From the NCBI RefSeq assembly GCF_902652985.1, contig NC_047021.1, forward strand, positions 16,678,001 through 16,742,000: a stretch of DNA of 64,000 nt, given 5' to 3'. The translations under genes and the position numbers were made by a program. This document shows positions 2,033 to 41,719 of the stretch, piece by piece; position 1 is the first letter of the stretch, and the number at the start of each line of letters is the position of its first letter. The stretch comes from Pecten maximus. Taxonomy: Eukaryota. The notes beneath the pieces were generated by a model. The model was not told where the DNA came from and did no database searches. It saw only the letters and a list, made by a program, of their open reading frames with translations.

Positions 2033-5000
2033 TCAACAAAATGTTTTCAACGCCACAAAGAGTCTCGGTAGGTCTAACAGGAAAACTCCGCCGAATGCCA
2101 CTGTCAGAAATCCTATGCCGAGGTATCCTACGTAGGCGGAGGTTGGACGAGGGTCGCTAGCACTGGTTCTCTTACGTATCGTCGACGATAAGTTCTCCTC
2201 GTTAACTTTGGTTTCCTTCTTCAGAATATCAATCTTTTTCTGTAGTTCCTCGTGGGTAATATTCACGACAGGGTTAACACAGCAATGACAGCATGGTGAG
2301 ATGCTGGAGGCAGTGGTTACGTCAGTGGTGACGCCAAAAGTTCTGTCAGTGTTGACGTCAGTATTCTGGTTTGTGGTGACGTCAGTAGTTCTTTTATTGG
2401 TGACTTCAATGTTCCGGTGAGTGTTGACATCGGTAGTCTGGTCAGGAATAGCTTCAGTTTCCAGGTTGGCGGTAGGATCAGCAGAGAGACCACCTGTGTT
2501 TTTTTTTGTAAAGCAAACAGAAATCAGTAATACTAATAATGCGAACGTATAGGAATAGGTAGAAGACTTAGTGGTAGCATGAGCAATTAATTAGACACTA
2601 CAGTTAATCATGTTGTTAAAGGCAGTTTGCCTAATTCGACTATCAAACTCGACAACAGTGATTTATATAAGGCAATAAAACTTGATACATCAACGGTGTG
2701 TAATCTTACATGGTTAGCTAAAGACTACTCTGTTTTGTATGAGTAAGCAAACATATGCATAAACAAAATTTATCAGAGTTAAGCTTTTTAGTGACGTGTG
2801 TATAATGAACGCTGACCTATATTTTACATAGCGGATGTCTACAATGAAGTAGAAGACGCTGAACCTTTCCGAATACCTGGTCCTTTTTTCTTGTTGTTGT
2901 CGAATATACATTGTCTCATTGAAAATTTATAGTGTTGGTTCGTATTTGCCATCGTTAAACAATTTTCAAAATATTGTTACAAGTCGTGTCTTGTATTTAA
3001 TGAAACATCTCTAATCGAGTGAAATAAATGCAACATTCAACAACCACTCTTTTTGCAACCCCTATTATAGTTTATATGTATATGTACCGGTTTGGTATGG
3101 CGTTGAACATAGTGCATAAGCCTCCGTTGAGCAAATACAATCATGGAATTTCCAGTTGTAGGTGAAGATTGTAATACATTCCCCATTGTCTGTGTTGGGC
3201 TGGCCGAAATCCCAAGGTATCCAGGATTGTACAATATCGGTTCCTTGCATCACAGTATCAGTCTGTGCCGACTTCTGGTATCCAACATAAAGGAAGTTCC
3301 AACTGGAAAGCAATCGCACCATGTTATAAAACAATCTTCCAATCTGTTAGTTTTATGGGATACCACTAATATATATGTATTCGTTGAACAGCAAAAATTC
3401 AACAATTCAATAACAGCACACTTTACTTATTAACATTACACAACACATTAACGAAACACGACATTCCTTGACATTAAACAACATAATAATGACACACTCC
3501 ACTCCTTAACATTCAACGACACAATAACGACATAGTTCACTTCTCACGGATAAACATAGTGAGGTAATACACACAACCTCACGGCACCCAGACAAACATA
3601 GTGACGTAATACACACAACCTCACGGTACCCAGACAAACATAGTGAGGTAATACACACAACCTCACGGCACCCAGACAAACATAGTGACGTAATACACAC
3701 AACCTCATGACACCCTGACAAACATAGTGAGGTAATACACACAACATCACGTCACCCAGACAAACAGTGACGTAATACACACAACCTCATGGCACCCAGA
3801 CAAGCATAGTGAGGTAAAACACACAACCTCACGGTACCCAGACAAACATAGTGAGGTAATACACACAACATCACGGTACCCAGACAAACATATTGACGTA
3901 ATACACACAACCTCACGGCACCCTGACAAACATAGTGAGGTAATACATACAATTTCACGGCAAACAGACAAGCATAGTGATGTAATAGGCACAACCTCAC
4001 GGCACCCAGACAAACATAGTGAGGTAATACACACAACATCACGACACCCAAACAAATATAGTGAGGTAATACACACAACTTCACGGCACCCAGACAAACA
4101 TAGTGAGGTAATACACAAAACTTCACGGTACCCAGACAAATATTTAAGCATTGAACTGCTTTCATTTGGAAGTTATGGGCTGATGAATGCCAACTTGACA
4201 AAGGCAATTTTAATGAAGCGCGCTAGTGCTTCATGTTGAATTTGCCTTTGTCCAGTTGACATTCATCAGCCCATAACTTCCAAATGAAAGCAGTTTAATG
4301 CTTATATTTACATTTGACGACTATCTTTAAAGACTTTATCCAGGGATTTTGCTCCTACTATGAATGAACAAATTATTATCGTCAAAGACGGAACAGCCTT
4401 TTCAAAAACAATCTTTCGTTATCGCCGACGTGACAATTATGACGTTACTATAATAATGACGTCATAATAAAGATTTGGAAGTTATGGACTCGTAACCTTC
4501 AAGCAAGCTTGGTAAGGTTATGCAGTGGGGCTGCAGTGTAAATGTAAATATAGTGTGGTAATACACACAACCTCACGTCACCCAAACAAATATAGTGACG
4601 TAATACACACAACATCACGGCACCCAGACAAACATAGTGAGGTAATACACACAACCTCACGGCACCCAGACAAACATAGTGACGTAATACACACAACATC
4701 ACGGTACCCTGACAAACATGGTGAGGTAAAACACACAACCTCACGGTACCCAGACAACCATAGTGACGTAATACACACAACTTCACGGCACCCAGACAAA
4801 CATAATGAGGTAATACACACAATTTCACGGCAAACAGACAAGCATAGTGATGTAATAGGCACAACCTCACGGCACCCTGACAAACATAGTGACGTAATAC
4901 ACACAACCTCACGGCACCCAGACAAACATAATGAGGTAATACACACAACCTCACGGCACCCTGACAAACATAGTTAGGTAATACACACAACATCACGACA

Positions 5001-8000: not shown

Positions 8001-11000
8001 AACCTCACGGCACCCAGACAAATATAGTGAGGTAATACACACAACCTCACGGTACCCAGGCAAACATAGTGACGTAATACACACAACCTCACGACACCCT
8101 GACAAACATGGTGAGGTAATACACACAACCTCACGGCACCCTGACAAACATAGTGAGGTAATACACACAACCTCACGGCACCCTGACAAACATAGTGACG
8201 TAATACACACAACCTCACGGCACCCAGACAAACATAATGAGGTAATACACACAACCTCACGGCACCCTGACAAACATAGTTAGGTAATACACACAACATC
8301 ACGACACCCAAACAAATATAGTGAGGTAATACACACAACTTCACGGCACCCAGACAAACATAGTGAGGTAATACACACAAATTCACGGTACCCAGACAAA
8401 CATAGTGACGTAATACACACAACCTCACGGCACCCTGACAAACATATTGACGTAATACACACAACCTCACGGCACCCTGACAAACATAGTTAGGTAATGC
8501 ACACAACCTCACGGTACACATACAAACATAGCTAGGTAATGCACACAACCTCGCGGCACCTTGACAAACATAGTGACGTAATACACACAACCTCATGGCA
8601 CCCAGACAAACATAGTTAGGTAATGCACACAACCTCACGGTACACATACAAACATAGTTAGGTAATGCACATAACCTCGCGGCACCTTGACAAACATAGT
8701 GACGTAATACACACAACCTCACGGTACCCAGACAAACATAGTGAGGTAATACACACAACCTCACGGTACCCAGACAAACATAGTGACGTAATACACACAA
8801 CCTCACGACACCCTGACAAACATGGTGAGGTAATACACACAACCTCACGGCACCCTGACAAACATAGTGAGGTAATACACACAACCTCACGGCACCCAGA
8901 CAAACATAGTTAGGTAATACACACAACCTCACGGTACCCAGACAAACATAGTGAGGTAATAAACACAACCTCACGGTACCCTGACAAACATAGTGAGGTA
9001 ATACACTCAACCTCACGACACCCAGACAAACATAGTGTGGTAATACACACAACCTCACGGCACCCAGACAAACATAGTTAGGTAATACACACAACCTCAC
9101 GGCACCCAGGCAAACATAGTGAGGTAATACACACAACCTCCCGGTACCCAGACAAATATAGTGAGGTAATACACACAACCTCACGGCACCCAGACAAATA
9201 TAGTGAGGTAATACACACAACCTCACGGTACCCAGGCAAACATAGTGACGTAATACACACAACCTCACGACACCCTGACAAACATGGTGAGGTAATACAC
9301 ACAACCTCACGGCACCCTGACAAACATAGTGAGGTAATACACACAACCTCACGACACCCTGACAAACATGGTGAGGTAATACACACAACCTCACGACACC
9401 CAGACAAACATGGTGAGGTAATACACACAACCTCACGGCACCCTGACAAACATAGTGAGGTAATACACACAACCTCACGGCACCCAGACAAACATGGTGA
9501 GGTAATACACACAACCTCACGGTACCCAGGCAAACATGGTTAGGTAATACACACAACCTCACGGTACCCAGACCAACTTCACGACACCCACACAAACATA
9601 GTGAGGTAATACACACAACCTCACGGCACCCAGACAAACATAGTGAGGTAATACACACAACCTCACGGCACCCAGACAAACATAGTGACGTAATACACGC
9701 AACCTCACGGTACCCAGACAAACATAGTGAGGTAATACACACAACCTCACGGTCACCCAGACAAACATAGTGAGGTAATACACACAACCTCACGGCACCC
9801 AGACAAACATAGTGAGGTACACATGTAATACACACAACCTCACGGTACCCAGACAAACATAGTGACGTAATACACCCAACCTCACGGTACCCAGACAAAC
9901 ATGGTGAGGTAAAACACACAACCTCACGGTACCAAGACAAACATGGTGAGGTAATACACACAACATCACGGCACCCAGACAAACAGAGTGAGGTAATACA
10001 CACAACCACATGGCACCCAGGTAAACATAGTGACGTAATACACACAACCTCACGGCATCTTGACAACCATAGTGACGTAATACACACAACTTCACGGCAC
10101 CCAGACAAACATAATGAGGTAATACATACAATTTCACGGCAAACAGACAAGCATAGTGATGTAATAGGCACAACCTCACGGTACCCAGACAAACATAGTG
10201 AGGTAATACACACAACCTCACGGCACCCTGACAAACATAGTGTGGTAATACACACAACATCACGACACCCAAACAAATATAGTGAGGTAATACACACAAC
10301 TTCACGGCACCCAGACAAACATAGTGAGGTAATACACAAAACTTCACGGTACCCAGACAAATATTTAAGCATTGAACTTTTTTCATTTGGAAGTGATGGG
10401 CTGATGAATGCCAACTTGACAAAGGCAATTTTAATGAAGCGCGCTAGTGCTTCATGTTGAATTTGCCTTTGTCCAGTTGACATTCATCAGCCCATAACTT
10501 CCAAATGAAAGCAGTTTAATGCTTATATTTACATTTGACGACTATCTTTAAAGACTTTATCCAGGGATTTTGCTCCTACTATGAATGAACAAATTATTAT
10601 CGTCAAAGACGGAACAGCCTTTTCAAAAACCATCTTTCGTTATCGCCGACGTGACAATTATGACGTTACTATAATAATGACGTCATAATAAAGATTTGGA
10701 AGTTATGGACTCGTAACCTTCAAGCAAGCTTGGTAAGGTTATGCAGTGGGGCTGCAGTGTAAATGTAAATATAGTGTGGTAATACACACAACCTCACGTC
10801 ACCCAAACAAATATAGTGACGTAATACACACAACATCACGGCACCCTGACAAACATAGTGAGGTAAAACACACAACCTCACGGTACCCAGACAACCATAG
10901 TGACGTAATACACACAACTTCACGGCACCCAGACAAACATAATGAGGTAATACACACAATTTCACGGCAAACAGACAAGCATAGTGATGTAATAGGCACA

Positions 11001-13166
11001 ACCTCACGGCACACAGACAAACATAGTGAGGTAATACACACAACCTCACGGCACCCTGACAAACATAGTGTGGTAATACACACAACATCACGACACCCAG
11101 GCAAACATAGTGAGGTAATACACACAACCTCACGGCACCCAGACAAACATAGTGAGGTAAAACACACAACCTCACGGTACCCAGACAACCATAGTGAGGT
11201 AATACACACAACCTCACGGCATCCAGACAAACATAGTGAGGTAATACACACAACCTCACGGCACCCAGACAAAGATAGTGAGGTAATACACAGAACCTCA
11301 CAACACCCAAACAAATATAGTGAGGTAATACACACAACTTCACGGCACCCAGACAAACATAGTGAGGTAATACACACAAATTCACGGTACCCAGACAAAC
11401 ATAGTGACGTAATACACACAACCTCACGGCACCCTGACAAACATATTGACGTAATACACACAACCTCACGGCACCCTGACAAACATAGTTAGGTAATGCA
11501 CACAACCTCACGGTACACATACAAACATAGCTAGGTAATGCACACAACCTCGCGGCACCTTGACAAACATAGTGACGTAATACACACAACCTCACGGCAC
11601 CCAGACAAACATAGTGACGTAATACACACAACCTCACGGCACCCAGACAAACATAGTTAGGTAATGCACACAACCTCACGGTACACATACAAACATAGTT
11701 AGGTAATGCACACAACCTCGCGGCACCCTGACAAACATAGTGACGTAATACACACTACCTCACGGCATCCTGACAAACATGGTGAGGTAAGGTATCATTT
11801 GATTTTTTTCACAAATCGTTTGATTGTGTTGTCAACCTCGTGCATTTCGCAAAGGGTATATCCAAATTCCAACAATTAAGTGAACTGAGGATGAACTTTC
11901 AAACATAAATAACCATTCATGCTTATATAGCAAAATAATCACAAATACGTCTATGTTAGGACATTTTAAACTTAAATCTAACCGAATTCTACGTATGTTT
12001 GGGTTCTTAAGGATATATTACAAATGTAAGCACTAGTGTTTAAAGTGTTATACAGAATGTAAACCTGCGAACCAATAATATTGTACGATAACAGGTGAAA
12101 TCATAGCTTAGTACCACTGTTAGTAGGGACAAAACAATTTCAATACACTCTCGAACTTAACATGTAAATATTTTATATCGGTTACTTTGATTAAAAGATA
12201 TGAGTGACCTATCATGTCAGGGTTTTTTTTGTTTAATTATTATTTCAACATGAGGTACTTGTATCATAAATCTAAACTTGAACCTCTATATTCCGTAAAT
12301 AGCGGGGAATTGTTGTAATTACACCAGGTAAATACTTAATGAACCAATTGATATTATGAGATTAAACGAATATGTATCATCACATAAAACTTACTATCCA
12401 GGAAGTTGTTGTCTTATGAATGCTGAGATGTTCGAAATGGCCTCTTCCTTTGGGAAATACGCAAGTGTACCATCACTTTCCTGGCACGCGTCTTCACTCG
12501 ATGAGGCGTCTTGCCGTCTATCTATAACCCAGTAGCAGATTTGGGTTTCGCTAACGTCGGTTAAACATTCACACAGGGGAATAACCGCTATAAAATAATT
12601 AGAAATACAACATGATGACACATTTAAAACTGTTAAATTTCAGTCCACTATTCATTTGTCTATTTTAAAACTGGTTTCATAATTTTTCTTTATTTTACTG
12701 AATTAATTCATAGTTGTGTAAAAAAAGTCACACTTTCCAGTTTGGGATCACTTGGCATTTGTCTTGTAAGCTTGATCGTTTTCCACATGAACGTTTGTCA
12801 AATTCATACTAGTCCATTTTGTCATTTTAGGTATTGTTTTCAATTTGGCTGGAATCTATCATTTACTGGTAGTTTTAATCCACTGTCAGAAAAAAGAGTA
12901 AAATTAATAGGATTGTCATGAAATGTCGTTTTGAAGATGGCTATACAAATGATAAACGCACACTTAGAACGGTGAACCTTCTGTGAAAATAATTGGTAAT
13001 CAATCTGATATATTGTTCCATTTGTTTTACTAGAAATGAATTATTGTAATAGACAGACTATATATACAATATAAAACAAGGTGCGTTTACCTGACTGAGA
13101 CAGATACACGGTACCACAGAGGAATTGTATACCACACCATGCCCGAAGCAGTATCCTCCAGTCCAT
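2033..13166 (-). CDS. Gene A: type I membrane C-type lectin with short Thr-rich stalk and conserved juxtamembrane module (~314 aa, 4 exons)
   Basis: Exons 13166-13091 (signal peptide), 12587-12395 (CTLD N-half, ICYW..AC..DGTLA), 3302-3088 (CTLD C-half, LYVGY, WDFGQPN, ECI..FHDCIC..ALC), 2493-2033 (stalk, CCHCC, helix, LSSTIRKRTSASDPRP, TM). All introns GT-AG, phases 1,2,1; 945 nt open frame. Confidence 0.85.
4142..4551. mobile_element. ~408-bp fold-back/MITE-like insert, copy 1
   Basis: Interrupts the 42-bp unit at AAATAT. First ~165 bp is an imperfect palindrome centred on GCGCTAGTGC. The remainder is bounded by TATATTTACATTT...AAATGTAAATATA. Confidence 0.7.
6272..6681. mobile_element. ~408-bp fold-back insert, copy 2
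   Basis: Near-identical to copy 1 at offset 2130, with the same flanking repeat variants. Confidence 0.7.
10363..10772. mobile_element. ~408-bp fold-back insert, copy 3
   Basis: Near-identical to copy 1 at offset 6221, with a few substitutions in the left arm. Confidence 0.7.
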
Positions 13167-19056: not shown

Positions 19057-19976
19057 TCATAAGAAAAATGTTTTCAACATCATGATCATTCTTGGCAGGT
19101 CGAGTAGAAGAATTCCTCCAAATGTCGTGGCCAGAAGCGCTATTCCAACGTATCCAACATAAGCAGAGGATGGGCGTGGGTCACTGGCACTTGTCCTCGC
19201 CCTAATCGTCGATGACAAATTCTCCTCGTCAACCTTGGTTTCTTTCTTCAGAGTATCCAATTTCAACTGTAGCTCCTCGGTGATGTTTACGACAGAGTAA
19301 AAAATTAGTCCATTTGCATCACAATCACAAGAACAGGTGTTGCTCTGAGTAGATACAAGCACGGCCGTAGTTGCTTCACCCGTAACGTTATCGCTTGACA
19401 CTTCTGAACCTGTACATGGATAAAAGAAAAATATGATTAATAAGTCTGTACATACCCTGATCCTTAACATCTAAGGATCATTAATGACATTACACGTTTA
19501 GATGAGATATAGAGATCTGTAGTCTGTGACAATATATGTCTAAAATTGCCTCCATCACGCTTTAACTTCCTGAATATGGAGTCTGAGATCCTTTATCTAA
19601 GGTTCGGTCAAGAATAATAGACACAAGTATTTCGCTGCTTTTTTTTTTTTTTTTTCTTTTTAATTTGTGTCTTCTGAAAGCAATGTTTTAGGCTGATGGA
19701 GATAGAATGGAATAGTATTTGTCTCTATGCGATGGAGGGTATGCAACTTAAATGACATGAATAAGAAAGCATCATCTCGAATCTACAAATTGTCTCGCTG
19801 AAAAAGTAAACATTGAAACTGTGTTGAATGGTTACCATGGAAAAGTCTTATCAAATTTATTTTTGTTATTTACCAAAGATTTCCGTCTATTTAAGGATAA
19901 AAATAATCTTACTTGTATGATGGCACATAGCAATACTCAGAATCTGCATCCCACAAAACAGCGTTTTCCACGTCAT
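19057..19976 (-). CDS. Gene B: lectin-less family member (signal peptide, short stalk, juxtamembrane module, TM; ~138 aa, 2 coding exons)
   Basis: Exon 19976-19913 MTWKTLFCGMQILSIAMCHHT with A|GTAAGA phase-1 donor (in-frame upstream ATG at 20015, acceptor TTATTTTAG at 20031). Exon 19409-19057 after CATGTACAG: SEVSSDNVT..CSCDC..EELQLKLDTLKKETKVDEENLSSTIRARTSASDPRPSS-TM. The join is in frame. Confidence 0.75.
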
Positions 19977-21139
19977 GATAAGCGCATGAATTATGTAATA
20001 TTCCAATATTTCCATGCAGTATATGTCAACCTAAAATAACCTGCCGTTAGAAGCTCACATCTAAACATTTATAATATGCTGCCTTGTCCGAGTAATCTAA
20101 TTCATAATATATACTTCTAGTTAATCTATATACTTATGTTGCTACAATGTTTGGCGTATTGTTCTGAGCCATAACCAATGTTTACTCAAGCTCCATCAGC
20201 TTTTAGCACTTCAAGGTTCCATTAAACTAATCTACTAAAACTATTCGCGATATCAGTTCTCTATTTACATATGACCTACCGATAGTGGGCAAATTATGTA
20301 CAAGCAGAGAACAAATAAATCACTTGGTTGTCAGCTTATTGAATACTGAAATTAAGAAAGAAGTCTGTAAAATATATTTCACGAGGCCTTCACAACATTC
20401 CATTCATGAAAATGCATAAAAGTAAGCAAAACAATCAAACGTCATTGTCGGCGATGTGAATAATTTTATTTTACAACAGAGTATGTGATTATACTTAGTG
20501 AGAATATCACAAATAGTAGCACTCTATTCATGAACATTCACCAAAGCTGATTGTTCACACAACAACACAAGACCACAATAACAACGGATGGCATACCAAT
20601 GGCATAACAATGTATATTCACGAATCGTATCTGACAACAATGTATTCGCATCCGACAACAAAATTCCTATAAGACAAGTTGTTTCTAACAGATAACACTT
20701 TATTCGTATCCGACACTAATTTATAATAGTATCAGAAATTTATGTTTTTATAGCAATGATTATTGCACCTGATTATATACAAATGGGTGCCTGAAGGCAT
20801 GTTGATAATTTACGTCTGGCAGTAATTAGCTCAATTAAATATATGAATGATCATTTGAGGAACAAATAGATATAAACAATGCGTACTTGTTCACATGCTT
20901 CAAATCAAGAAAGAAAATGGATACGTATTGTTAGTTTTCCATTTATAAATTAGAACATCGCTGCTTACCTACCATTCAGTATTCAATGGATTGTTCCCAT
21001 CAATACGATTTTCGTGGCAGCTATTGACTACTGACGGAGAAATTAACAACACAAATATTCGAGAGAGGAAAGTTGGCGAAGACAATGAGAAAGTGTTACG
21101 GTCTACATCAGTATCTCAATTAGAAATGTTATATTGCTT

Positions 21140-22575: not shown

Positions 22576-25500
22576 ATGCTATGGAACTTTCTGACCAGTA
22601 TATTATTACTGGCGAATTACCCAGGTAAGATTATGGTCTTTGTATAGATTTCAACATCTTTTGTGTTTGTTGCAGTTGTTCTTATACTATATTACAGAGT
22701 AGAAAAAATATTTTCAAATGAATGTCAAAATAGCGTATAAATCACGGACATACTGAATTAGCAAAATTTTTAATCGTTGACAAATATGTCGTTATTGTGT
22801 ATAATTCGTATCCCTGTACGTATATACATTACAGTAAAGGTATTCATATCATCTAACAGACGATTTGTCACTATGAACAGTGTACCACTCGACCATTTCT
22901 CTACCAATGAAATGTTCGATAACAGAACGTGGATGTGGCGCAATGGTATCAGCTGCGGGTATTACTGGCTAGGCGAATAGGTGTCGAAGGTCGTGAGTTC
23001 GAGGCTGGGTCAGGGCACATGTCATAAAATTGTCTTCCTTCGTCAGTTGTGACTGTCAGTTGTGTCAATATGTGTCTTGGTTCGTAAACCAGATATATCT
23101 TTTATTTTCTAGCATACTGTATTTTCTCTTCAGGGGGATATTCACAATGTCAAAGCGGTGCCGAGTTGTACTACCTTTTCCCACACGGAGATATTTGTTA
23201 CTGGATACTGAGTTTATATTCGCCGAGAAATGCGGCAGACAGTGAAACTGGCTGTAGGAGTGAGAACGGAGAGCTAGCTTACATCCCCAACATATATGCT
23301 CTCATCACAGTGATGCAACTATTATTGAATAATAATGCGAACGTCAGGTTAGTGACACTTAGTCCATTTAAAAACTGTTGTACAATATATTTAAGGAGGA
23401 ACATCTGTCTGATGACATGTTGTATGATTTCCAGTCTTTATTATATCAATGCCAAGTGAAGCTTTCAACGTATCAATTACGCTATGGGGTAGGAAGCAAG
23501 TGCATGATATCTTTATTTAGACTTTTGTTTTAGTATTTCCTTACTTTGATATATGATTTGTTTCCTGATTTTAAACTGATGATTATATTGTGACAAAAAG
23601 GTAAGTATTCCATTTTTGTCAAAAATGATATAAAATATATAAAAACAGATTTCTAGATTCTTCATATGTTAGATAAAGACATTGAGAACTAGGCGTGTAG
23701 AAAAATAATTTGTACGCATGACAGATGACGTCTAGTGTGGCCGATAAAAACCGATCATATTTTTTTCAGAATATAAGTACTGTGTTGTCAGAGATTCGTT
23801 ACCAATTTAAACAAAGCTTTATTAAGGTAAACTTGTTAATATTAACAACTAATATACCGCCAAAGCATGTGACACATCTTTTTTAACATGGCTGTGATCG
23901 GAATTTTTTATAATTTTTTATAATGTTGAACGCAAGAACACAATTAGTTGATAGTGAATACACGTGTAGATTGAATAAATTTCTTTTCCATTTCCGCATT
24001 TTCAGCGGCTGGTATGCTTACTTGGGATATAGTCGGGTAACCTCTTCCACTACATTATTGGAAATACAAAACAGTGGCGTTTACCAAACGTGGATACCAT
24101 GGGACCAAGTGATGGGCCAACCATTACAAAGCAGCTTGGGATGTATAGCACTTCATGGCACCTCGGGGCTTTGGCATGACATGCACTGTGCTAATAACAT
24201 AAGGGCAATATGCTCAACGCCTTATCACACAGGTATGCCAGTAGTTTTTAAATAAGCTACATTTCAAATAAAAATGACATACATTTCAATCAGATTTTTT
24301 AAAATTAGTTATGTCATTGTGAAAAACTTAAACACACTGTCTTAGCTAGTAATTTCATTGTGAAACACTTTAACATACTGTCTTAACTAGTAATGCCATT
24401 GCGAAACACTTGAACACATTGTCGTAACAAGTTATATAATTGTGGAACACTTGGATACAATGTCTTAACTAGGTATGTCATTGTGAAACACTTGAACATA
24501 CTGTCTTAATTTTTATGTGACTTGGAGGTGAAACAATTTATTTAGCAGCCATCAACAAAACAATGAAGGGTAACAGGTAAAATTATTTGAAAGGACTATA
24601 AGCATTCCAGTTACGACAAGATACCAATTTTTAATCGATTCTATTAGTATATCATCTTGTTATTCTGTGATATTGTCGTATTGGATTCCATGTTCATTAT
24701 TATTACTACAGATACAACACAGGCCCCAACGATCACCTCTACAACGACACGGGTCCCAACAACAACCACTACAACCACCCAAGAACCGACAACCACTACA
24801 ACAACAACTCAGGAACCCATAACAACAACTACTACAACAACTCAGGAACCCACAACAACAACCACTACAACAACTCAGGAACCCACAACAACAACCACTA
24901 CAACAACTCAGGAACCCACAACAACAACCACTACAACAACTCAGGAACCCACAGCAACAACCACTACAACAACTCAGGAACCCACAACAACAACCACTAC
25001 AACAACTCAGGAACCCACAACAACCACTACAACAACTCAGGAACCCACAACAACCACTACAACAACTCAGGAATCCACAACTACTACATCAACAACTCAG
25101 GAACCGACAACCACTACAACAACAACTCGGGAACCGACGACCACTACAACAACTCAGGAACCCACAACCACTACAACTCAACCACCAACAACAACGGCAA
25201 CGACCAAGGAACCGAAAACAACAACGACGACGACTACTGATGTACCGACAACAACAACGACAACAACCGATGAACCCACCACAACTACAACTACAACGCA
25301 GGATCTAACAACCAGTAGAATAACCATTGAAGAATTATCTACATCGAGCCACACGGATTGCGTGTGCCCATGCGATCATAGTCCTCATACAGAGTTTTTC
25401 TCAACCGTTAATATGACTGAGGAGCTACAGGCGAAATTGGACAGTTTAAAGGAGGAAACAAAAGTTGATGAGGAGACTTTATCGTCAACTATCAGAAAGA

Positions 25501-25637
25501 GGACCAGTGCCCACGATCCCCGTCCGTCCTCGACCTATGTTGGATACTTGGGCATAGCACTTCTCTCCTTTATATTTGGTGGCCTGATCCTTGCAGATCT
25601 GTTAAGTGTGATCATCACCTTAAAACTCATTTTATAA
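22576..25637 (+). CDS. Gene C: type I membrane C-type lectin-mucin (~471 aa, 4 exons)
   Basis: Exons 22576-22624 (MLWNFLTSILLLANYP-G), 23134-23347 (ICYW..GC..NGELA), 24006-24232 (AYLGY, WDQVMGQPL, GCIAL..LWHDMHC..AIC), 24712-25637 (QEPT7-8 mucin, CVCPC, LSSTIRKRTSAHDPRPSS, TM). GT-AG introns, phases 1,2,1; 1416 nt open. Confidence 0.88.
22800..23050 (+). repeat. Dispersed repeat with tRNA-like A/B boxes (inverted copy at ~57960-58220)
   Basis: GTGGATGTGGCGCAATGGTAT..GTTCGA..CAGGGCAC..TTGTCTTC aligns with the reverse complement of 57960-58220. Confidence 0.65.
24310..24512. repeat. Degenerate ~41-42-bp tandem repeat in intron 3 of gene C
   Basis: About 5 copies of TCATTGTGAAACACTTGAACATACTGTCTTAACTAG. 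Confidence 0.75.
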
Positions 25638-28429: not shown

Positions 28430-29234
28430 ATGTAACACCTAAGGATATCCATAATGATATGGAAGCAACACCAGAGAAAGATGTCCTTCATATGCTACAG
28501 TAAAAAGGTGGGTGGCGGAATTTAAGCACCGCCGACAGAGCCTTGAGGATGACCCACGTCCTGGAAGGCCTGTCAATGTTGCAACCCCAGAAATGGTCAA
28601 TAAAGTGCATGATATTGTTATGACTGACAGACATTTCATAGGAAAGAATACATTCCATTCCAATCTTAACCTTGTTGAAGAAGATCCTTCCAACTTTCTT
28701 CAGAGATTTGTCACTATGGATGAAATATGGTCCATCATTTTACCCCAGCGGCCGAACAACAATCGAAACAATGGAAGCACCCTGGCTCTCCCCGCCAAAG
28801 AAGGCAAAGACTGTTCCATCAGCTGGGAAGGTTATGGCCTCGGTTGTCTGGGATACAGATGGTATTCTGCGGATAGATTATCTCCAAAAGGAACAAACAA
28901 TCAATAACACATTCTATGCTTCGCTTCTGAGGCAGTTACGGGAAAATATTCAACTTAAACGCTACGGAAAGCTCACTAAGGTGTGTTATTCCATCCGGAC
29001 AGTGCTCATGTTCACAAGTCTGTCATTGCCATAGCTGCCATTCACGATTGTGGCTTTAAATTTATTGAACATCCACCTTATTCACTTGATCACACTCCAT
29101 CAGTCTTGCATCTATTTTCAAAACTGAAAGTGTATAGATACTGAATGTGATTATGTCGAAAAAATAATACAATATGTCCGGCAAAATTCAAATTCTTCAA
29201 TATGAGACTCATAACATATCAATCAGCCCTCGTA
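28430..29234 (+). mobile_element. Truncated mariner (Tc1/mariner) transposon, transposase pseudogene
   Basis: PSYATVKRWVAEFK..SLEDDPRPGRP, FVTMDE.W, PKKAKTVPSAGKVMASVVWD..GIL.IDYL, HPPYS spread over shifting frames with an internal deletion. Right TIR ends ..TCAATCAGCCCTCG-TA; left TIR not found. Confidence 0.9.
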
Positions 29235-30959: not shown

Positions 30960-33750
30960 TTGAGGGACATTTGTTAATTTTGTTCCCACAAGTGTACCAA
31001 TCATAAGGGACATTTGTTCCCACAAGTGTACCAATCTTGAGGGACATTTGTTAATTTTGTTCCCACAAGTGTACCAATCATGAAGGAATTTTGTTCCCAC
31101 AAGTGTACCAATCATGAGGGAATTTTGTTCCCACAAGTTTACCTATCATGAGGAAATTTGATCCCACAAGTGTACCAATCATGACGAAATTTTGTTCCCA
31201 CAAGTGTACCAATCATGAGGGAATTTTGTTCCCGCAAGTGTACCAATCATGAGGGAATTTTGTTCCCGCAAGTGTACCAATCATGAGGGAATTTTGTTCC
31301 CACAAGTGTACCAATCATGAGGGAATTTTGTTCCCGCAAGTGTATCAATCATGAGGAAATTTCGTTCCCACAAGTGTACCAATCATGAAGGAATTTTGTT
31401 CCCACAAGTGTACCAATCATGAAGGACATTTGTTCCCACAAGTGTACCTATCATGAGGGAATTTTGTTCCCACAAGTGTACCAATCATGAGGGAATTTTG
31501 TTCCCGCAAGTGTACCAATCATGAGGGAATTTCGTTCCCACAAGTGTACCAATCATGAAGGAATTTTGTTCCCACAAGTGTACCAATCATGAGGGAATTT
31601 TGTTCCCACAAGTGTACCAATCATGAAGGAATTTTGTTCCCACAAGTGTACCAATCATGAGGGAATTTTGTTCCCACAAGTGTACCTATCATCAGGAAAT
31701 TTGATCCCACAAGTGTACCAATCATGACGAAATTTTGTTCCCACAAGTGTACCAATCATGAGGGAATTTTGTTCCCGCAAGTGTACCAATCATGAGGGAA
31801 TTTTGTTCCCGCAAGTGTACCAATCATGAGGGAATTTTGTTCCCACAAGTGTACCAATCATGAGGGAATTTTGTTCCCGCAAGTGTATCAATCATGAGGA
31901 AATTTCGTTCCCACAAGTGTACCAATCATGAGGGAATTTTGTTCCCACAAGTGTACCAATCATAAGGGAATTTTGTTCCCACAAGTGTACCAATCATGAG
32001 GGAATTTTGTTCCCACAAGTGTACCAATCATGAAGGAAGTCCACAGTTAACAGGGAGAAACAGATGTACCAATCAAAGAATTCTGTTCACCTTCATATAC
32101 AAGTGGTGAGATAATGATGTGAGTGTACCAAAGAAGAATTTTTCCCATGACTCATCATCCAGCAATCTTTTAAAACCTTGGGTAATTGTTCAGTGTACAG
32201 CAAAGCTACATTTTCCACATGTACGCATCATGGGTAAAAGAGTTCCCTGGCATGTACAATCATTGGACATGCAACACAGAAATTAAATAATACGGATTAT
32301 CGTTTCATCATGTGACAATTGAAGTTTTAGCAATTGAGATAAGCGTGAATGTTAAAGATCTGAGATTCCTAGTTTTAGTTTTCCTCTACGGTACATCTGA
32401 AATTTTTATCCAAATAAAAATAATAGAATTGCCAGGTCAACTGAGGAATTTCGTTCCCACAAGGTCCATAGAATTGTTCCCACTACAACATAGGGACATT
32501 GTTTTCCCAAATGTACCAATCTGAGTCATTGTTGTTCCCGCAAGTGTATCAATCATGAGGAAATTTCGTTCCCACAAGTGTACCAATCATGAGGGAATTT
32601 TGTTCCCACAAGTGTACCAATCATAAGGGAATTTTGTTCCCACAAGTGTACCAATCATGAGGGAATTTTGTTCCCACAAGTGTACCAATCATGAAGGAAT
32701 TTGTTCCCACAAGTGTACCAATCATGAGGGAATTTTGTTCACACAAGTGTACCAATCATGAAGGAATTTTGTTCCCACAAGTGTACCAATCATGAGGAAT
32801 TTTGTTCCCACAAGTGTACCAATCATGAAGGAATTTTGTTCCCACAAGTGTACCAATCATGAGGGAATTTCGTTCCCACAAGTGTACCAATCATGAAGGA
32901 ATTTTGTTCCCACAAGTGTACCAATCATGAAGGAATTTGTTCCCACAAGTGTACCTAATCATGAGGGAATTTTGTTCCCACAAGTGTACCAATCATGAGG
33001 GAATTTTGTTCCCACAAGTGTACCAATCATGAGGGAATTTTGTTCCCACAAGTGTACCAATCATGAGGAAATTTTGTTCCCACAAGTGTACCAATCATGA
33101 GGGAAATTTTGTTCCCACAAGTGTACCAATCATGAGGGAATTTTGTTCCCACAAGTGTACCAATCATGAGGAATTTTGTTCCCACAAGTGTACCAATCAT
33201 GAGGGACATTTGTTCCCACAAGTGTACCAATCATGAGGGACATTTTGTTCCCACATGTGTACAAATCATGAGGGAATTTTGTTCCCACAAGTGTACCAAT
33301 CATGAGGGAATTTTGTTCCCACAAGTGTACCAATCATGAGGGAATTTTGTTCCCACAAGTGTACCTATCATGAGGGAATTTTTTCCCACAAGTGTACCAA
33401 TCATGAGGGAATTTTGTTCCCACAAGTGTACCAATCATGAGGAATTTTGTTCCCACAAGTGTACCAATCATGAGGGAATTTTGTTCCCACAAGTGTACCA
33501 ATCATGAAGGAATTTTGTTCCCACAAGTGTACCAATCATGAAGGAATTTCGTTCCCACAAATGTACCAATCATGAAGGAATTTTGTTCCCACAAGTGTAC
33601 CAATCATGAAGGAATTTCGTTCCCACAAGTGTACCAATCATGAAGGAATTTTGTTCCCACAAGTGTACCAATCATGAAGGAATTTCGTTCCCACAAGTGT
33701 ACCAATCATGAAGGAATTTCGTTCCCACAAGTGTACCAATCGTGAGGGAC
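30960..33750. repeat. 34-bp minisatellite array upstream of gene D, interrupted at 32040-32530
   Basis: Unit GTACCAATCATGAGGGAATTTTGTTCCCACAAGT. Confidence 0.96.
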
Positions 33751-37300: not shown

Positions 37301-40300
37301 ATTATACTGTACAGTGAACTATCAAAATGGGCTAATCATGCTTGTATTCTCCCTTTCTTCCTACTAGATAGATCTGACTTAATATGGTTGGAAGTGTATC
37401 GACAGATGACTGTTTTGACATGAACCATACAATTAAGTTTTTCATTGAGGCTCAGATGGTTGATACAGTGCATTCCTCTTTATATCATGTTGTATTTGTC
37501 AGACAAAAACATGATATTAACAGAAATGTGAGCAATCAGCTAATCAGGTCACAGCAGCCTCATTAAATATGCGCGGAATATGCCGATGATCGAACTTGAA
37601 CGAGGGGTTCAGGTTATAAGTGTACCAAGCAAGTTTCATCAAAATTCAATCATTCCTTCAAAAGATATCGTCCGAAAAGCAATCAGCCAATCAGGTCACA
37701 GCAGCCTCATTAAATATGCGCGGAATATGCCGATGATCGAACTTGAGTGAAGGGTTCAGGTTATAAGTGTACCAAGCAAGTTTCATCAAAAGCCAATCAT
37801 TCCTTCAAAAGATATCGTCCGGAAAGCGAATCCAGACGGACGGAAGGACCCCATTTGTATATCGTACTTCGTTGGGCGGGGGATAATAAATAATATTTGT
37901 TACTATTTAGGTAGGTTAGGCAGCGGCATATTGACAATAAACATCAATAACAATCTTGAAAACAAATCCCTAATGGGTGCACGACAGTGAAAAACATTCA
38001 GTCTGCGATTGTTTAGTCTATGAATTAAAAAATAATAAGGACATTAAAGTTTGGAAAAACTTATTATTACCATAGGTTTGTCATATGCTTGTCCCTGGCT
38101 AAATAAAGAAGTAAGGTCGTTTCCCGTTTACCTTGACCTAGGTTTAGGCCACGATACAGGTAATGAATTACGTGACACCGGTGATTCCCACAGCACCAAA
38201 ATACACCGCCATGGTCCATTGGCGCGCTGTGTGATATGAGCGGATTATGTAGTCAATCAATAACATATGAAATAAAGTTTATTGACATACCAGATAGGAA
38301 TTTTACACTATCATGTTTAATGTACATTTAACGTTAAAAATATTTTTTCAAATACGACCAAGAAAAAATGAATGGTGTTAAGAAAAACAAAAACAAATAT
38401 GAAAACATACATCTTGGTAGGTGATTCGAACTCCGAACCTACGGTTGCCTAAGCGTTGCGGTGCGCCTTTGGTTCTACCATATAAATCAAAATATTTTAT
38501 CAACTACGCTTTTTCGCTTTTTCGATGTTAGGATTTTAATTGTCTTTTACTACATAGAATAAAATTATGCATTGTAAAAATTGATCTTCCGATGCACTCT
38601 ATGTCAAATAAAGATTTGAATGCAGGAAAAAAACCCACGAACGTTGCAAATAGCTCGACTCATACCATTATTGTAGGAACATCACACGCGACATGTGGCT
38701 GTTTGATACGTTTTTTGTTTCTTTCTCGTTAATTAAGCTCGTGTCATTGTATCTTATGTATCTAACTTGAGTATTATTAACGCCGTATCCAACAACCACT
38801 TGTTTCCGTGCAACCTCTATTTCATCTGCTATTAAGTAGTTCTTCGGGAAGTGATAGCTCATTCGGTAGAACTTCGGACAGCAGCTTTAGGGGAATTCGA
38901 GGTTCAATCCCTACCCGAAGAGATTTATGTTTCTCAGAGAGCTAAAAACACGAACAGTTCTGTGATGTAGTGGCTGTTTCATGCGGCAAGATATTTCACC
39001 CCAAATGATCTTGTTGACATGCAACGGGCCTTCCGTATTGTGCCCAAGGAGATAGTCAACAGCTGTTACAAGGACACTCCGCCTCCAAATTACACTGGCT
39101 CTTTACTGAGCAATAAACGCAACAAAATACGCAAACTTATAAGTATTCAACGAATACAACCAAGTTTCATAATGCATAAAAAAAGTAAAAAATACGATAA
39201 GTATAAGAGTGAATTAACATCGTAATGATATGCTAATTAAAAGGCTACATTGTTTTATCGTATATTTTTAAACTTATAAATACTGTCTTGTGAATACGTT
39301 ACACATTTAAATTATGCTGATATATATTCTAATATTTAACCTAGTGAATTGTTAAAGTTGAAAATTTTAATGATGTAGGCATTAATTAAATACAAAGCCT
39401 ATTTTTTGTTTAATCAGATCAAACTGGCTATATATGGGATACAATGAATACAATAACAAAGTCACAGTGAGACGCACAGGGGAACAACAGTTGTGGACTT
39501 ATTGGGACAATAGAGAACCAAACGACAGAGTCTCTCCTGAACCATGTATAGCTATCAAGGTGGCCAACGGCAAATGGCATGATATTCCATGCACGTGGAA
39601 TGTATGTGCGTTATGCTCGAAACATCTCCATACAGGTTTGTCTTACTTGTTAACAAATCTTATGCATCTAAATCTAGCAGGTTTTCTTACCTTTTAAAAA
39701 AAATAATATGCATTCATTACTAGATCAATGTTAATGCACACTTGTATCAATTGAAGGCTCATTTTCCAAACATTGTTTCGATTGATTTACAGTAGGAATA
39801 AATAAAAAAAACAGTCTAAAGTTGTTAAATGTTTATAGATCTGTTTATGTAGGCTGTGATTTCTGGTCTTGGTTTTCTATGGTAAACATGACGGTAGCAC
39901 TAATTCACCACTGCACTATTCTGTTGCAGTTCTGTAAAATTTAGATTATATCATTTAAGATGACTGACGCTTTGCATATCCTAACCATTTTTTTAAAATA
40001 TGTTTGGTAGTAGTATTTAACGTAGAGTGTTCTAACTAGACGATTCAAACAAACAATTGATCTTAGAAATATATATCTATATGTCATCGGTAAAATAGTC
40101 AATGTATTTTCTATCTATTGACGTAAATAAGTTTTGGAATTTAAGTCAAAGTGCTTTTGATCCGGCTTAATGACAAAAACTTTTTTTTTTTAAGTGATTA
40201 TCAAACCGAACGATTAGATTCATTGTTGAACAAAAGAAATAACATTCTCTTCCTACATATTATTTAGTTGACTTTGTAGAATTTCAGCAAGCCATGCATG

Positions 40301-41719
40301 TTCATTTAAAGATGTAATTAATTATTGTGTCAGTTAAACATAAAGAAAAGCACAAATTGTAAATATTTTTTAAATACTGTTCCCATAGATACAACGACTG
40401 AGGAACTAACAACTGAAAAAACAACTCAGAAGCCTTATAATACAACCCCTCCCATTCCGTCAGGAATACCAACCACTTCACCTCAGGAACCGACGACCAA
40501 TAAAACAACCCAGGCACCGACAATTACTACAACAATTTGGGAACCGACATCCATCAATGCAACAACACAGGCACATACAACAATCACTGTAACTCAGGAA
40601 CCCTTAACATCAACCACTAAAACAACTCAGGAACCCACAACAACCACAACACCAACTCATGAACAAATAACCACAACCATTACAACAACTCAGGAACCCA
40701 CAACAACAGCCACTACAACAACTCAGGAACCCACAACAACAACCACTACAACAACTCAGGAACCCATAACAACAACCACTACAACAACTCAGGAACCCAC
40801 AACAACCACTACAACAACTCAGGAACCCACAACAACAACCACTACAACAACTCAGGAACCCATAACAACAACCACTACAACAACTCAGGAACCCACAACA
40901 ACCACTACAACAACTCAGGAACCCACAACAACAACCACTACAACAACTCAGGAACCCACAACAACCGCTACAACAACTCAGGAACCCATAACAACAACCA
41001 CTACAACAACTCAGGAACCCATAACAACAACCACTACAACAACTCAGGAACCCACAACAACCACTACAACAACTAAGGAACCCACAACAACCACTACAAC
41101 AACTCAGGAACCCACAGCAACAACCACTACCTTAACTCATGAACCAATAACCACAACCACTACAACAACTCAGGAACCCATAACAACAACCACTACAACA
41201 ATCACTACTACTCAGGAATCCATAACCACTTCGACAAGCACGACAACATCAAAGGAACTAACAACAGCCAGTACAACAATCCAGGAATTGACAACCATCG
41301 TTGCAGCATCTCAAGAAATAACAACTTCAAAAAAGCAGAAGCCATCAACCACTACTTCAACAATTCGGGAACTAGCAATAACTACAACAGCTGGGGCTCA
41401 AACAGCATCCACTACAACAACTATTGAGAACATAACAACACCAATCCTCATCGCCTGCTTTTGTCCGTGTAGACAGAGTAACTACACGGTCAGTGAGCTT
41501 GAAGCCAAACTAGAGAATTTAAAGGAGCAGACAAGAATTGACGAAGAAACGTTATCGTCTACGATAAGAAAGAGGACTTGTGCCGACGATCCTCGTCCCT
41601 CTGTGGCCTATGTAGGATACATTGGAATAGGGTTTCTAACTTTCATATCCTTTGGAATTTTACTGCCGGACATTTTTCAAATGATACAAACACTAGAACG
41701 ACTTCGTGAAACAAATTAA
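34392..41719 (+). CDS. Gene D: type I membrane C-type lectin-mucin with EPN/WHD site and long stalk (~602 aa, 4 exons)
   Basis: Exons 34392-34461 (MDTDSFTILIALYLQGGTFGSHI-G), 35105-35294 (TCFW..RC..GGHLA), 39418-39635 (WLYMGY, YWDNREPND, PCIAI..KWHDIPC..ALC), 40389-41719 (mucin, CFCPC, LSSTIRKRTCADDPRPS, TM). Phases 1,2,1; 1809 nt open. Confidence 0.88.
34778..34995. repeat. Degenerate ~43-44-bp tandem repeat in intron 1 of gene D
   Basis: About 5 copies of AATGCAAATGT..TAGTATTTCCGGTTTGGCGTTATG. Confidence 0.7.
36400..36865 (+). repeat. Dispersed repeat (second copy at ~48140-48610)
   Basis: Shared CAGCAATCCAATA..GACGTCCGG.AAAATCGGAAT, TTTTTGGCAGAATC.GTCTGCGTTT and CAGTTATTATTT.ATGG(G)AATT motifs in the same orientation. 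Confidence 0.75.
37111..37890 (+). mobile_element. Non-autonomous Helentron-associated (pearl/HINE-like) element
   Basis: Starts AACAAGG..ATCCCCCGCCC and ends GGGCGGGGGATAATAA (inverted pair). Two tandem 147-bp cores (37531, 37678) followed by (GACG/GGAC)n. Confidence 0.65.

What the first reader, a model, noticed from the sequence alone, without database searches (positions are those of the whole stretch)
25355..25637. Conserved unnamed membrane-proximal module: CxCxC - N-x-T - helix - LSSTIRKRTSAxDPRPS - TM with terminal Asp
Seen in all four last exons (also 2033-2300, 19057-19340, 41455-41719): a Cys cluster (CCHCC/CSCDC/CVCPC/CFCPC), a glycosylation sequon (NIT/NIT/NMT/NYT), an amphipathic helix ELxxK(L/I)xxLK, T(K/R)(V/I)(D/N)EExLSSTIRxRT, DPRP, YVGYxGI, and an invariant Asp ending the TM. 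The ~12-residue tail has no Tyr signalling motif. Inference: a disulfide-linked coiled-coil oligomerisation neck plus a conserved basic site (RKR; RAR in gene B) for convertase shedding or for docking a signalling partner. Its conservation exceeds that of the ligand-binding domain, so it probably carries the shared function.
Basis: partly seen in the sequence, partly recalled or inferred. Interest (0 to 1): 0.75.

Follow-up and report, generated by a model that had tools for sequence, protein, structure and literature searches.

The report
Mollusc-wide receptor stalk-and-anchor module
Four neighbouring scallop lectin-type genes end in the same roughly 90-residue stalk-and-membrane-anchor piece, an unnamed module that many kinds of mollusc surface protein share and that probably clusters them or ties them to a common partner.

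Summary
All four sites encode the same C-terminal module: CxCxC, an N-x-T sequon, an amphipathic helix, LSSTIRxRTSAxDPRPS, and a TM helix ending in Asp (36 invariant columns). This genome has at least 150 six-frame matches on all 19 large contigs. A library of 1.84 billion proteins holds 1654 cluster representatives, with the module almost always at the C-terminus. Every hit that carries an organism name is a bivalve or gastropod. No Pfam model, solved structure or paper found covers it (eight literature searches). Of 80 longer homologues, 25 carry Lectin_C and 10 IgGFc_binding; Sushi, EGF, Ig, PAN, WSC, TSP1 and others also occur. D-x-R, one Gly and the TM Asp are invariant in 153 instances. 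Among the window's paralogues the module evolves about half as fast as the lectin exon. RNA-like contigs confirm splicing of gene C. The convertase idea fails: R-x-[KR]-R occurs in 1 of 153. Best reading: a type I anchor that oligomerises through disulfides, a short coiled coil and one TM face. Docking of a shared partner is the main rival. The scan's notes hold no earlier record of this module.

The parts
25341..25637 (+). Module copy C (the finding): the 98-residue C-terminus of gene C plus its stop codon
   Evidence: ORF; alignment; own-genome profile hit at E 1.5e-45; covered by RNA-like contigs; identical to the end of P0195
25359..25373 (+). Cys cluster CVCPC (family CxCxC)
   Evidence: Translation; all three Cys in 105 of 153 family instances and at least two in 145 of 153
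25410..25418 (+). N-glycosylation sequon N-M-T
   Evidence: N-x-[ST] at this profile position in 93 of 153
25419..25460 (+). Amphipathic ectodomain helix EELQAKLDSLKEET
   Evidence: AlphaFold2 helix at residues 27-40; hydrophobic periodicity at 100 degrees is 3 times the mean power
25479..25529 (+). Juxtamembrane motif LSSTIRKRTSAHDPRPS, the most conserved stretch of the family, with invariant D-x-R
   Evidence: Translation; information content per position; D-x-R in 153 of 153
25536..25598 (+). Transmembrane helix YVGYLGIALLSFIFGGLILAD, with invariant Gly near its start and invariant Asp at its cytosolic end
   Evidence: Translation; AlphaFold2 helix 62-97 with pLDDT 97-99; Gly in 153 of 153 and Asp in 149 of 149 ungapped; conservation period 95-100 degrees
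25599..25634 (+). Short cytosolic tail LLSVIITLKLIL with no Tyr
   Evidence: family tails have median 20 aa and are net positive in 94% of 139
2033..2320 (-). Module copy A (end of gene A, which corresponds to P0001)
19057..19356 (-). Module copy B (end of gene B, which corresponds to P0002 and has no lectin domain)
41441..41719 (+). Module copy D (end of gene D)
24712..25340 (+). Thr-rich mucin-like stalk of gene C (33-bp coding repeats), in the same last exon as the module
   Evidence: Acceptor from the GT..AG joint 24228>24708 (cut +4) in 4 of 4 runs; tandem repeat 24717-25182; ORF
24006..24232 (+). Gene C exon for the second half of the CTLD; the following intron is phase 1
   Evidence: Lectin_C E 4.3e-4 on this piece alone; joints; donor context; the full protein P0195 scores Lectin_C 30.7 bits
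23131..23347 (+). Gene C exon for the first half of the CTLD
   Evidence: Contigs and the joint 23343>24002 (1 of 4 runs shows the joint); P0195 mapping
22576..22626 (+). Gene C signal-peptide exon
   Evidence: P0195 residues 1-17 map here at 100% identity

Best explanation
This is a previously unmodelled C-terminal stalk-neck plus transmembrane anchor module of about 85-95 residues, seen so far only in molluscs. It makes its carrier a type I single-pass surface protein, with ectodomain and O-glycosylated stalk outside and a short basic tail inside. It has been combined with many different ectodomains. In this window those are a C-type lectin domain plus Thr-rich stalk (genes A, C, D) or almost nothing (gene B).

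Shown:
- its existence and conservation;
- its C-terminal position;
- its many partner domains;
- transcription and splicing of gene C;
- the single TM segment with positive-inside tails.

Inferred: the module works as a parallel self-association unit.
- The odd-numbered CxCxC cluster would form interchain disulfides.
- The short heptad-patterned helix and one conserved face of the TM helix (G..G...L...FG.I...D) would pack chain against chain.
- The invariant juxtamembrane D-x-R and the interface Asp would lock the assembly at the two membrane surfaces.
- The result would be multivalent display of low-affinity binding domains.
For: Family size and position:
- At least 150 copies in the genome, 144 of the 150 scored without a stop.
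- 1654 library representatives at E<=0.001.
- The module ends a median of 8 residues from the C-terminus.

Partner domains: 24 Pfam families among 80 longer homologues, led by Lectin_C in 25 and IgGFc_binding in 10.

Topology:
- 76 of 80 proteins of at least 200 aa have exactly one TM-like segment.
- Tails are net positive in 94% of 139.
- Gene C has a signal-peptide exon.

Selection: dN/dS is 0.11-0.14 with saturated dS.

Self-association indicators:
- Three conserved Cys with no fourth conserved partner in the module.
- Ser is replaced by Cys at profile position 51 in 26 of 153.
- Hydrophobic positions fall at 24, 28, 31, 35, 42 and 46.
- TM conservation is periodic at 95-100 degrees, with power 4.5-4.8 against a mean of 0.95.
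- AlphaFold2 gives helix 27-40, helix 48-55, a loop, then a very confident helix 62-97.

Stalk: the 60 residues upstream are Ser/Thr/Pro-rich (median 0.42 against 0.26 overall).
Against: - No oligomer-state test was possible; there was no multimer prediction and no biochemistry.
- The predicted ectodomain helix is short, 14 residues plus an 8-residue second helix.
- The Cys cluster is modelled with low confidence (pLDDT 63-74), and pTM is only 0.40.
- The full CxCxC is present in only 105 of 153 instances.
- The most conserved part is the 18-residue juxtamembrane motif, not the helix. Self-association does not specifically predict that pattern; a shared external partner or enzyme would explain it at least as well.
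- An Asp at the cytosolic end of every chain would be brought together in a homo-oligomer, which is not obviously favourable.
Confidence: 0.5

Rival explanations
1. Shared-partner docking. The invariant juxtamembrane D-x-R, the conserved TM face and the interface Asp would bind one common membrane protein, such as a signalling adaptor, co-receptor or chaperone. That partner would serve the many short-tailed receptors. The logic is that of DAP12/FcR-gamma-coupled immunoreceptors or of plant receptor-like proteins with SOBIR1.
For: - The four invariant residues and the highest information content lie in the juxtamembrane motif and on one TM face. The ligand-binding parts and the tail are less constrained.
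- Tails are short (median 20 aa) and without a shared motif. Y..[LIV] occurs in 23 of 139, and there is no Tyr in the four window tails.
- A charged residue occurs in the TM core (positions 62-80) in only 2 of 153, while the Asp at position 81 is universal.
- The comparison with DAP12 and SOBIR1 rests on my own knowledge, not on a call.
Against: - No candidate partner was identified or could be searched for.
- The Asp sits at the membrane-cytosol boundary rather than mid-membrane.
- The acidic residue is on the receptor, the reverse of the vertebrate arrangement.
- This rival is compatible with, not exclusive of, self-association.
Confidence: 0.27
2. Regulated ectodomain shedding. The conserved juxtamembrane motif would be the recognition site of a protease that releases the lectin or mucin ectodomain. 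That protease could be a convertase at the basic triplet, or a different sheddase or intramembrane protease.
For: - The motif lies about 8-20 residues outside the membrane.
- It contains a basic cluster: dibasic at positions 48-49 in 91 of 153.
- It also has small residues (S-A) just above a Gly-rich start of the TM helix.
Against: - R-x-[KR]-R occurs in 1 of 153, and KR or RR at 48-49 in 28 of 153.
- Position 49 is Leu in 28 of 153. Gene B has RAR, and P4 is Ile in all four window copies.
- Metalloprotease sheddases, by my own knowledge, need little sequence conservation.
- A cleaved-off anchor would not need an invariant cytosolic-end Asp or a conserved TM face.
Confidence: 0.1
3. Sorting or quality-control signal. 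The module would direct ER exit or targeting to a particular membrane domain (apical, ciliary or microvillar). Or the charged TM end would hold unassembled chains in the ER.
For: - The module is strictly C-terminal and shared by unrelated ectodomains.
- The polar residue at the TM end is invariant.
Against: No localisation data exist. Sorting signals are usually cytosolic, whereas most of the conservation here is extracellular.
Confidence: 0.08
4. GPI-attachment signal. The C-terminal hydrophobic stretch would be cleaved off and replaced by a lipid anchor at a small residue in T-S-A or P-S-A.
For: - Small residues (S-A) lie upstream of a C-terminal hydrophobic stretch.
- The four window tails are only 12-15 residues and are themselves hydrophobic.
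Against: - Family tails after the Asp have a median of 20 aa and reach 71 aa. They are net positive in 94% of 139.
- A discarded signal would not keep invariant residues or a conserved helical face.
Confidence: 0.02

Closest known systems
Vertebrate group 14 C-type lectin-domain proteins (thrombomodulin, CD93, CLEC14A, CD248) and layilin
   Same: They are type I surface glycoproteins with an N-terminal CTLD, a mucin-like stalk, a single TM helix and a short tail. Genes A, C and D have this overall layout. The vertebrate architecture is from the abstract of PMC6852297 as listed and from my own knowledge.
   Different: The resemblance is in architecture only. There are no EGF repeats here, and I know of no CxCxC-helix-DxRPS-TM module in those proteins. 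The module gave no Pfam match at threshold and no PDB match.
Cys-flanked coiled-coil oligomerisation necks (collectins, DC-SIGN/langerin/CD23 necks, COMP, matrilins, thrombospondins)
   Same: These place a cluster of Cys next to a heptad-patterned helix that multimerises lectin or adhesive domains. That is the mechanism proposed here. The list of examples is recalled, not taken from a call.
   Different: Those necks are longer, and they are soluble or type II. Here the helix is about 2-3 heptads long, sits directly above a type I TM helix, and is followed by an invariant D-x-R motif. Oligomerisation was not tested here.
Receptors that depend on a shared TM partner (DAP12/FcR-gamma-coupled immunoreceptors; plant receptor-like proteins with SOBIR1)
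   Same: Many ectodomains are combined with short, non-signalling tails and a conserved TM or juxtamembrane feature that includes a charged residue. The comparison rests on my own knowledge.
   Different: The charge is acidic, it sits on the receptor, and it lies at the cytosolic boundary. No partner is known.
Oyster transmembrane C-type lectins CgCLec-TM1 and CgCLec-HTM
   Same: They are bivalve membrane-bound CTLD receptors (passages of the review PMC13027682).
   Different: They are described as signalling through a hemITAM in the cytoplasmic tail with Syk. The four window tails have no Tyr. I had no sequence of either protein, so I could not test whether they carry this module.
Biomphalaria polymorphic single-pass TM gene clusters (PTC1/GRC, PTC2, LG5R)
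   Same: They are tandem clusters of mollusc single-pass TM genes with small cytosolic parts and, for PTC2, no known domain (passages of PMC7494358 and PMC13712769). The window likewise holds a tandem cluster, six copies within about 60 kb.
   Different: No sequence comparison was possible. This is a lead only.
Pfam families built on single TM regions (ISK_Channel/KCNE, DUF3040, MGC-24/CD164)
   Same: Each is a helix or Cys/mucin region followed by one TM helix. These were the best weak hits.
   Different: All are below threshold. ISK_Channel scores 13.9 bits against a cut-off of 22.1. DUF3040 hits 7 of 56 members with best E 4.3e-4, and MGC-24 hits 1 of 56 at E 0.01.

Membership tests
Any Pfam-A family covering the module | hmmscan score at or above the family's gathering cut-off | tested here: not met
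   For the four window copies at E<=10, the best hit is 13.9 bits against a cut-off of 22.1. For 56 short family members at E<=1, only scattered sub-threshold hits appear. For 80 long members, every hit at E<=0.001 is a known ectodomain or mucin-type family and none models the module (positions of these hits were not listed).
Proprotein-convertase (furin-type) cleavage site | R-x-[K/R]-R in the juxtamembrane stretch, conserved across members | tested here: not met
   0 of 4 window copies have it; P4 is Ile. It occurs in 1 of 153 family instances, and KR or RR at positions 48-49 in 28 of 153.
GPI-anchor attachment signal | The hydrophobic stretch reaches the C-terminus, with no charged cytosolic tail | tested here: not met
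   Tails after the TM Asp have median 20 aa (range 7-71) and are net positive in 94% of 139.
Type I single-pass membrane protein | N-terminal signal peptide, one TM segment near the C-terminus, positive-inside tail | tested here: met
   The gene C product P0195 starts with a hydrophobic leader on its own exon. 76 of 80 proteins of at least 200 aa have one TM-like segment. Only 27 of 79 show a clear N-terminal h-region by a crude test, and many models look truncated.
Coiled-coil oligomerisation neck | Heptad (3-4) spacing of hydrophobic residues in a helix | tested here: met
   Hydrophobic profile positions are 24, 28, 31, 35, 42 and 46. Power at 100 degrees is 26 against a mean of 8.5. AlphaFold2 gives a helix at residues 27-40.
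Coiled-coil oligomerisation neck | Demonstrated dimer, trimer or higher state, with interchain disulfides | not testable with these tools
   Only single-chain prediction is offered, and no biochemistry is available.
C-type lectin receptor (genes A, C, D) | Lectin_C domain above the gathering score | tested here: met
   P0195 (gene C) scores 30.7 bits against a cut-off of 22.6, residues 48-158. 25 of 80 homologues carry Lectin_C. Gene B has none. The gene A model P0001 is N-terminally partial and scores nothing.

The most novel reading that the evidence does not exclude
The module is a universal receptor-coupling cassette of molluscs. Many otherwise unrelated surface proteins (lectins, FCGBP-like, Sushi, EGF, Ig, TSP1 and others) would all plug, through the invariant D-x-R motif, one TM face and the interface Asp, into one still unknown membrane partner that signals or internalises for them. 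That would be an invertebrate counterpart of the DAP12/FcR-gamma or RLP-SOBIR1 principle. It could be the anchor of the polymorphic single-pass TM clusters linked to schistosome resistance in snails.
Probability: 0.2. Interest if true: 0.8.

Novelty: new variant of a known kind. Interest (0 to 1): 0.55.

Why it matters
Mollusc genomes carry very large repertoires of lectin-like and other surface recognition proteins, and how they signal is mostly unknown. A single, strongly constrained anchor shared by many of them would have several uses:
- It gives a handle for annotation. One new profile would label more than 1600 protein clusters that now read 'uncharacterized', 'salivary glue protein-like' or 'serine-rich adhesin-like'.
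- It gives a concrete target for finding a common partner or assembly state.
- It gives a direct test of whether membrane-bound lectins of bivalves act as multivalent clusters.
- If the Biomphalaria resistance clusters use the same anchor, it would also bear on snail-schistosome compatibility.

Tried and rejected
Searches that found nothing:
- Pfam on the four copies and on 56 short members gave only sub-threshold noise.
- A PDB sequence search gave a best E of 0.11, to ZapA.
- Foldseek of the AlphaFold2 model against the PDB gave no match at E<=10. I did not run the VIA searches, because a helix-loop-TM-helix model has little fold to match.
- The ESM Atlas gave only unnamed mollusc clusters.

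Limits of the word-indexed protein search: it was inefficient here, with 18, 3 and 6 hits. It could not define the range outside molluscs, so absence from other phyla is not shown.

Readings rejected:
- Gene conversion as the cause of the module's conservation. I took the idea from note s1-794594. dS between copies is saturated.
- A GPI signal.
- A convertase site.
- An Asp-Pro acid-labile bond as in GDPH-type mucins. D-P occurs in only 41 of 153.

Things I could not test:
- Whether CgCLec-TM1/HTM or the Biomphalaria PTC genes carry the module.

Literature searches that found no description of the module.

Selections made before counts:
- The 80 proteins were the longer ones that I picked by hand from the 150 listed.
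- The 101 library proteins used in alignment A4 (103 rows with window copies A, B and D and copy C as first row) were those of at most 320 aa, minus six with atypical module positions. Two of them, P0001 and P0002, were left out because they duplicate window copies.
- One search counted only the 139 instances where a regular expression found the TM Asp and the tail was at most 80 aa.
Full report
**What is in the window**

The window is eukaryotic. Proteins returned by the searches and named by their sources as Pecten maximus map to it at 97-100% identity.

- copy A at 2033-2320 (-)
- copy B at 19057-19356 (-)
- copy C at 25341-25637 (+)
- copy D at 41441-41719 (+)

Their alignment has 36 invariant columns and 68% mean column identity.
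- the Cys clusters CCHCC, CSCDC, CVCPC and CFCPC
- an N-x-T sequon
- the helix ELxxK(L/I)xxLK
- LSSTIR(K/A)RT and DPRP
- YVGYxGI
- an Asp closing the hydrophobic stretch
- a 12-15-residue tail without Tyr

I checked the coordinates of the sub-elements of copy C by translation.

**Gene structure**

Gene C corresponds to P0195, a 471-aa model that its source names 'salivary glue protein Sgs-3-like'. Its exons are:
- 22576-22626 (hydrophobic leader)
- about 23131-23347
- about 24006-24232
- about 24712 to beyond 25886

Contigs of four public runs (kind guessed as RNA) cover these three downstream exons and leave both introns uncovered. They carry GT..AG joints: 24228>24708 in 4 of 4 runs and 23343>24002 in 1 of 4.

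P0195 has a Lectin_C domain at residues 48-158, scoring 30.7 bits against a cut-off of 22.6.

The intron before the last exon is phase 1 (donor context). The last exon encodes both the Thr-rich stalk (33-bp repeats) and the module, so the module is the end of the last exon rather than an exon of its own.

In other genes of this genome the open frame begins only about 15-35 codons before the Cys cluster. There the module may be a separate terminal exon; this is inferred, not shown.

Gene A corresponds to P0001. Its lectin exons lie at 12403-12573 and 3086-3322, with its last exon from about 2497. Gene B corresponds to P0002 and joins a short first exon (20015-19908) to the anchor exon without any lectin domain.

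Full-length products are those returned by the tools.

**How widespread it is**

A profile of the four copies finds at least 150 six-frame matches at E<=0.01 in the 918-Mb genome. That is 150 scored of 253 candidates, so it is a lower bound. The matches lie on all 19 large contigs and six small ones, and 144 of the 150 have no in-frame stop. Two more close paralogues lie just upstream of the window, so the local tandem cluster has six members.

Against 1.84 billion representative proteins the same profile finds 1654 at E<=0.001, 318 at E<=1e-10 and 7 at E<=1e-30. In the 150 listed, the module ends a median of 8 residues from the C-terminus (90th percentile 32.5). The few internal cases look like fused gene models, with six proteins showing two stretches.

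Of 30 proteins looked up by cluster, 22 carry an organism name, and all 22 are molluscs. The named hits add further genera:
- Bivalves: Pecten, Mizuhopecten, Argopecten, Saccostrea, Ostrea, Magallana, Crassostrea, Pinctada, Mactra, Tegillarca.
- Gastropods: Lottia, Littorina, Batillaria, Bradybaena, Babylonia, Nucella.

I could not examine the 1504 unlisted hits or the unnamed records. Presence in cephalopods or other phyla is therefore open.

**What is conserved**

In 153 module instances taken from the 150 proteins, the consensus is C-x-C-x-C ... N-[LIM]-T ... EEL..K[ILV]..[LI]KKEL.V[DN]K..LSS[TS][IV]R[KR][KRL][TI][SC]A.D.RPS[AS]..[IV]GY.G...L...FG.I...D.

- D-x-R is present in 153 of 153.
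- The first TM Gly is present in 153 of 153.
- The closing Asp is present in 149 of 149 ungapped instances.
- All three Cys are present in 105 of 153, and at least two in 145.
- The sequon is present in 93 of 153.

Information content peaks in the 18 residues just outside the membrane. Within the TM helix, conservation is periodic at 95-100 degrees (power 4.5-4.8 against a mean of 0.95), which means one conserved face. The ectodomain helix is amphipathic, with hydrophobic residues at 3-4 spacing.

Tails after the Asp have a median of 20 aa (range 7-71) and are net positive in 94% of 139. The 60 residues upstream are Ser/Thr/Pro-rich, with a median fraction of 0.42 against 0.26 overall.

AlphaFold2 with a 103-row alignment gives:
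- a poorly defined Cys region (pLDDT 63-74)
- helices at 27-40 and 48-55
- a loop over S-A-H-D-P-R
- a very confident helix at 62-97
- no compact fold (pTM 0.40)

**Selection**

Between the window's copies the module has dN 0.25-0.45 and dN/dS 0.11-0.14, with dS above 1.8 or not computable. The second lectin exon of A, C and D has dN 0.66-0.77. The module is thus about twice as constrained as the lectin exon. Saturated dS argues against recent gene conversion as the reason.

**Is it known?**

Nothing I could search covers the module:
- No Pfam family reaches threshold on the four copies or on 56 short members.
- In 80 long members, every Pfam hit is a known ectodomain or mucin-type family and none models the module.
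- There is no PDB sequence match and no fold match.
- The ESM Atlas gives only unnamed mollusc clusters.
- Eight full-text searches found no description.

A bivalve C-type lectin survey only records whether a TM domain is present (passages of PMC10140915). InterPro signatures other than Pfam could not be checked. One source name ('CFEM domain-containing', P0063) hints at a weak automatic signature on one member; I did not follow it up.

**Partner domains**

Among the 80 longer homologues, which I picked by hand from the 150 listed, 24 Pfam families appear. The main ones:

| Pfam family | Members of 80 |
|---|---|
| Lectin_C | 25 |
| IgGFc_binding | 10 |
| Ephrin_rec_like | 4 |
| Sushi | 4 |
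| PAN_1 | 4 |
| WSC | 3 |
| EGF types, Ig types, TSP_1 | 2 each |
| F5/8 type C, HRM | 1 each |

The module is therefore a promiscuous anchor rather than a feature of one lectin family.

**Mechanism**

Shown: it is the C-terminal membrane anchor of type I surface proteins and is under strong purifying selection.

Inferred, and my preferred reading (about 0.5): it is a parallel self-association unit.
- Three Cys with no conserved fourth cannot all pair within one chain.
- They sit beside a heptad-patterned helix.
- The TM helix keeps one face.
- Position 51 switches Ser to Cys in 26 of 153 instances.

Clustering would give avidity to low-affinity lectin and adhesive domains held on a stiff O-glycosylated stalk.

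The main rival (about 0.27) is docking of one shared membrane partner through D-x-R, the TM face and the interface Asp. It fits the very high conservation of the juxtamembrane motif and the short, motif-less tails. The two readings are not exclusive.

Three other readings are less likely:
- Shedding by a convertase is not supported. R-x-[KR]-R occurs in 1 of 153, P4 is Ile in the window copies, and the supposed P1 is Lys or Leu in most members.
- Shedding by another protease stays possible at about 0.1.
- A GPI signal is very unlikely, given the long basic tails and the invariant residues in the part that would be discarded.

**Leads not closed**

- Biomphalaria resistance regions are clusters of single-pass TM genes with small cytosolic parts and, for PTC2, no known domains (passages of PMC7494358 and PMC13712769).
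- Oyster CgCLec-TM1 and CgCLec-HTM are membrane lectins said to signal through a hemITAM (passages of PMC13027682).

I had no sequences for either group, and the gene lists are in supplementary files that I could not open. Whether they carry this module is untested.

**Verdict**

The module is a new, unnamed mollusc anchor family. The convertase idea is not. I found no earlier record of the module in the scan's notes.

Noticed in passing
window 3552-11790: A 42-bp minisatellite of roughly 196 units (98.7 copies of an 84-bp double unit) is open in several frames on both strands. It lies between the two lectin exons of gene A (12403-12573 and 3086-3322), so it is most likely intronic rather than coding.
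   Followed up: partly
window 49590-55230: A GC-rich block (52% against about 35% around it) has long ORFs. One carries reverse transcriptase (RVT_1, E 1.4e-20) and RNase H. A downstream frame gives a weak phage-integrase SAM-like hit (E 0.003). It looks like a tyrosine-recombinase (DIRS-like) retrotransposon.
   Followed up: partly
window 28512-29034: A mariner-type transposase remnant is split over two overlapping frames (Transposase_1, E 2.1e-16), so it appears frameshifted.
   Followed up: partly
window 19057-20015 (-): Gene B (P0002, 151 aa) joins a short first exon directly to the anchor exon and has no lectin domain or long stalk. A module-only member suggests that the anchor may act on its own.
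   Followed up: partly
window 25633: Some contigs of runs X2-X4 carry T>G here, together with three further differences in the 3' UTR. That would turn the last sense codon of gene C into a stop, giving a tail one residue shorter. It is probably an allele.
   Followed up: no
window 30976-33749 and 41762-42592: Two further tandem arrays: a 34-bp unit in 81 copies between genes C and D, and a 21-bp unit in about 40 copies just downstream of gene D that gives open frames of ENIKTVV-like repeats.
   Followed up: no
window 24010-24234, 3086-3301, 39425-39637: At the usual sugar-binding positions, the lectin exons of genes C, A and D read QPL/QPN/EPN and WHD/FHD/WHD rather than the classical WND. The position assignment is from my own knowledge. 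The ligand specificities of the paralogues probably differ.
   Followed up: no
G000:C7:16659907-16660179 and 16674449-16674727 (L006, L005): Two more close paralogues lie just upstream of the window. One of them is P0194, named 'macrophage mannose receptor 1-like' by its source, with a Lectin_C domain. The tandem cluster therefore has at least six genes.
   Followed up: partly
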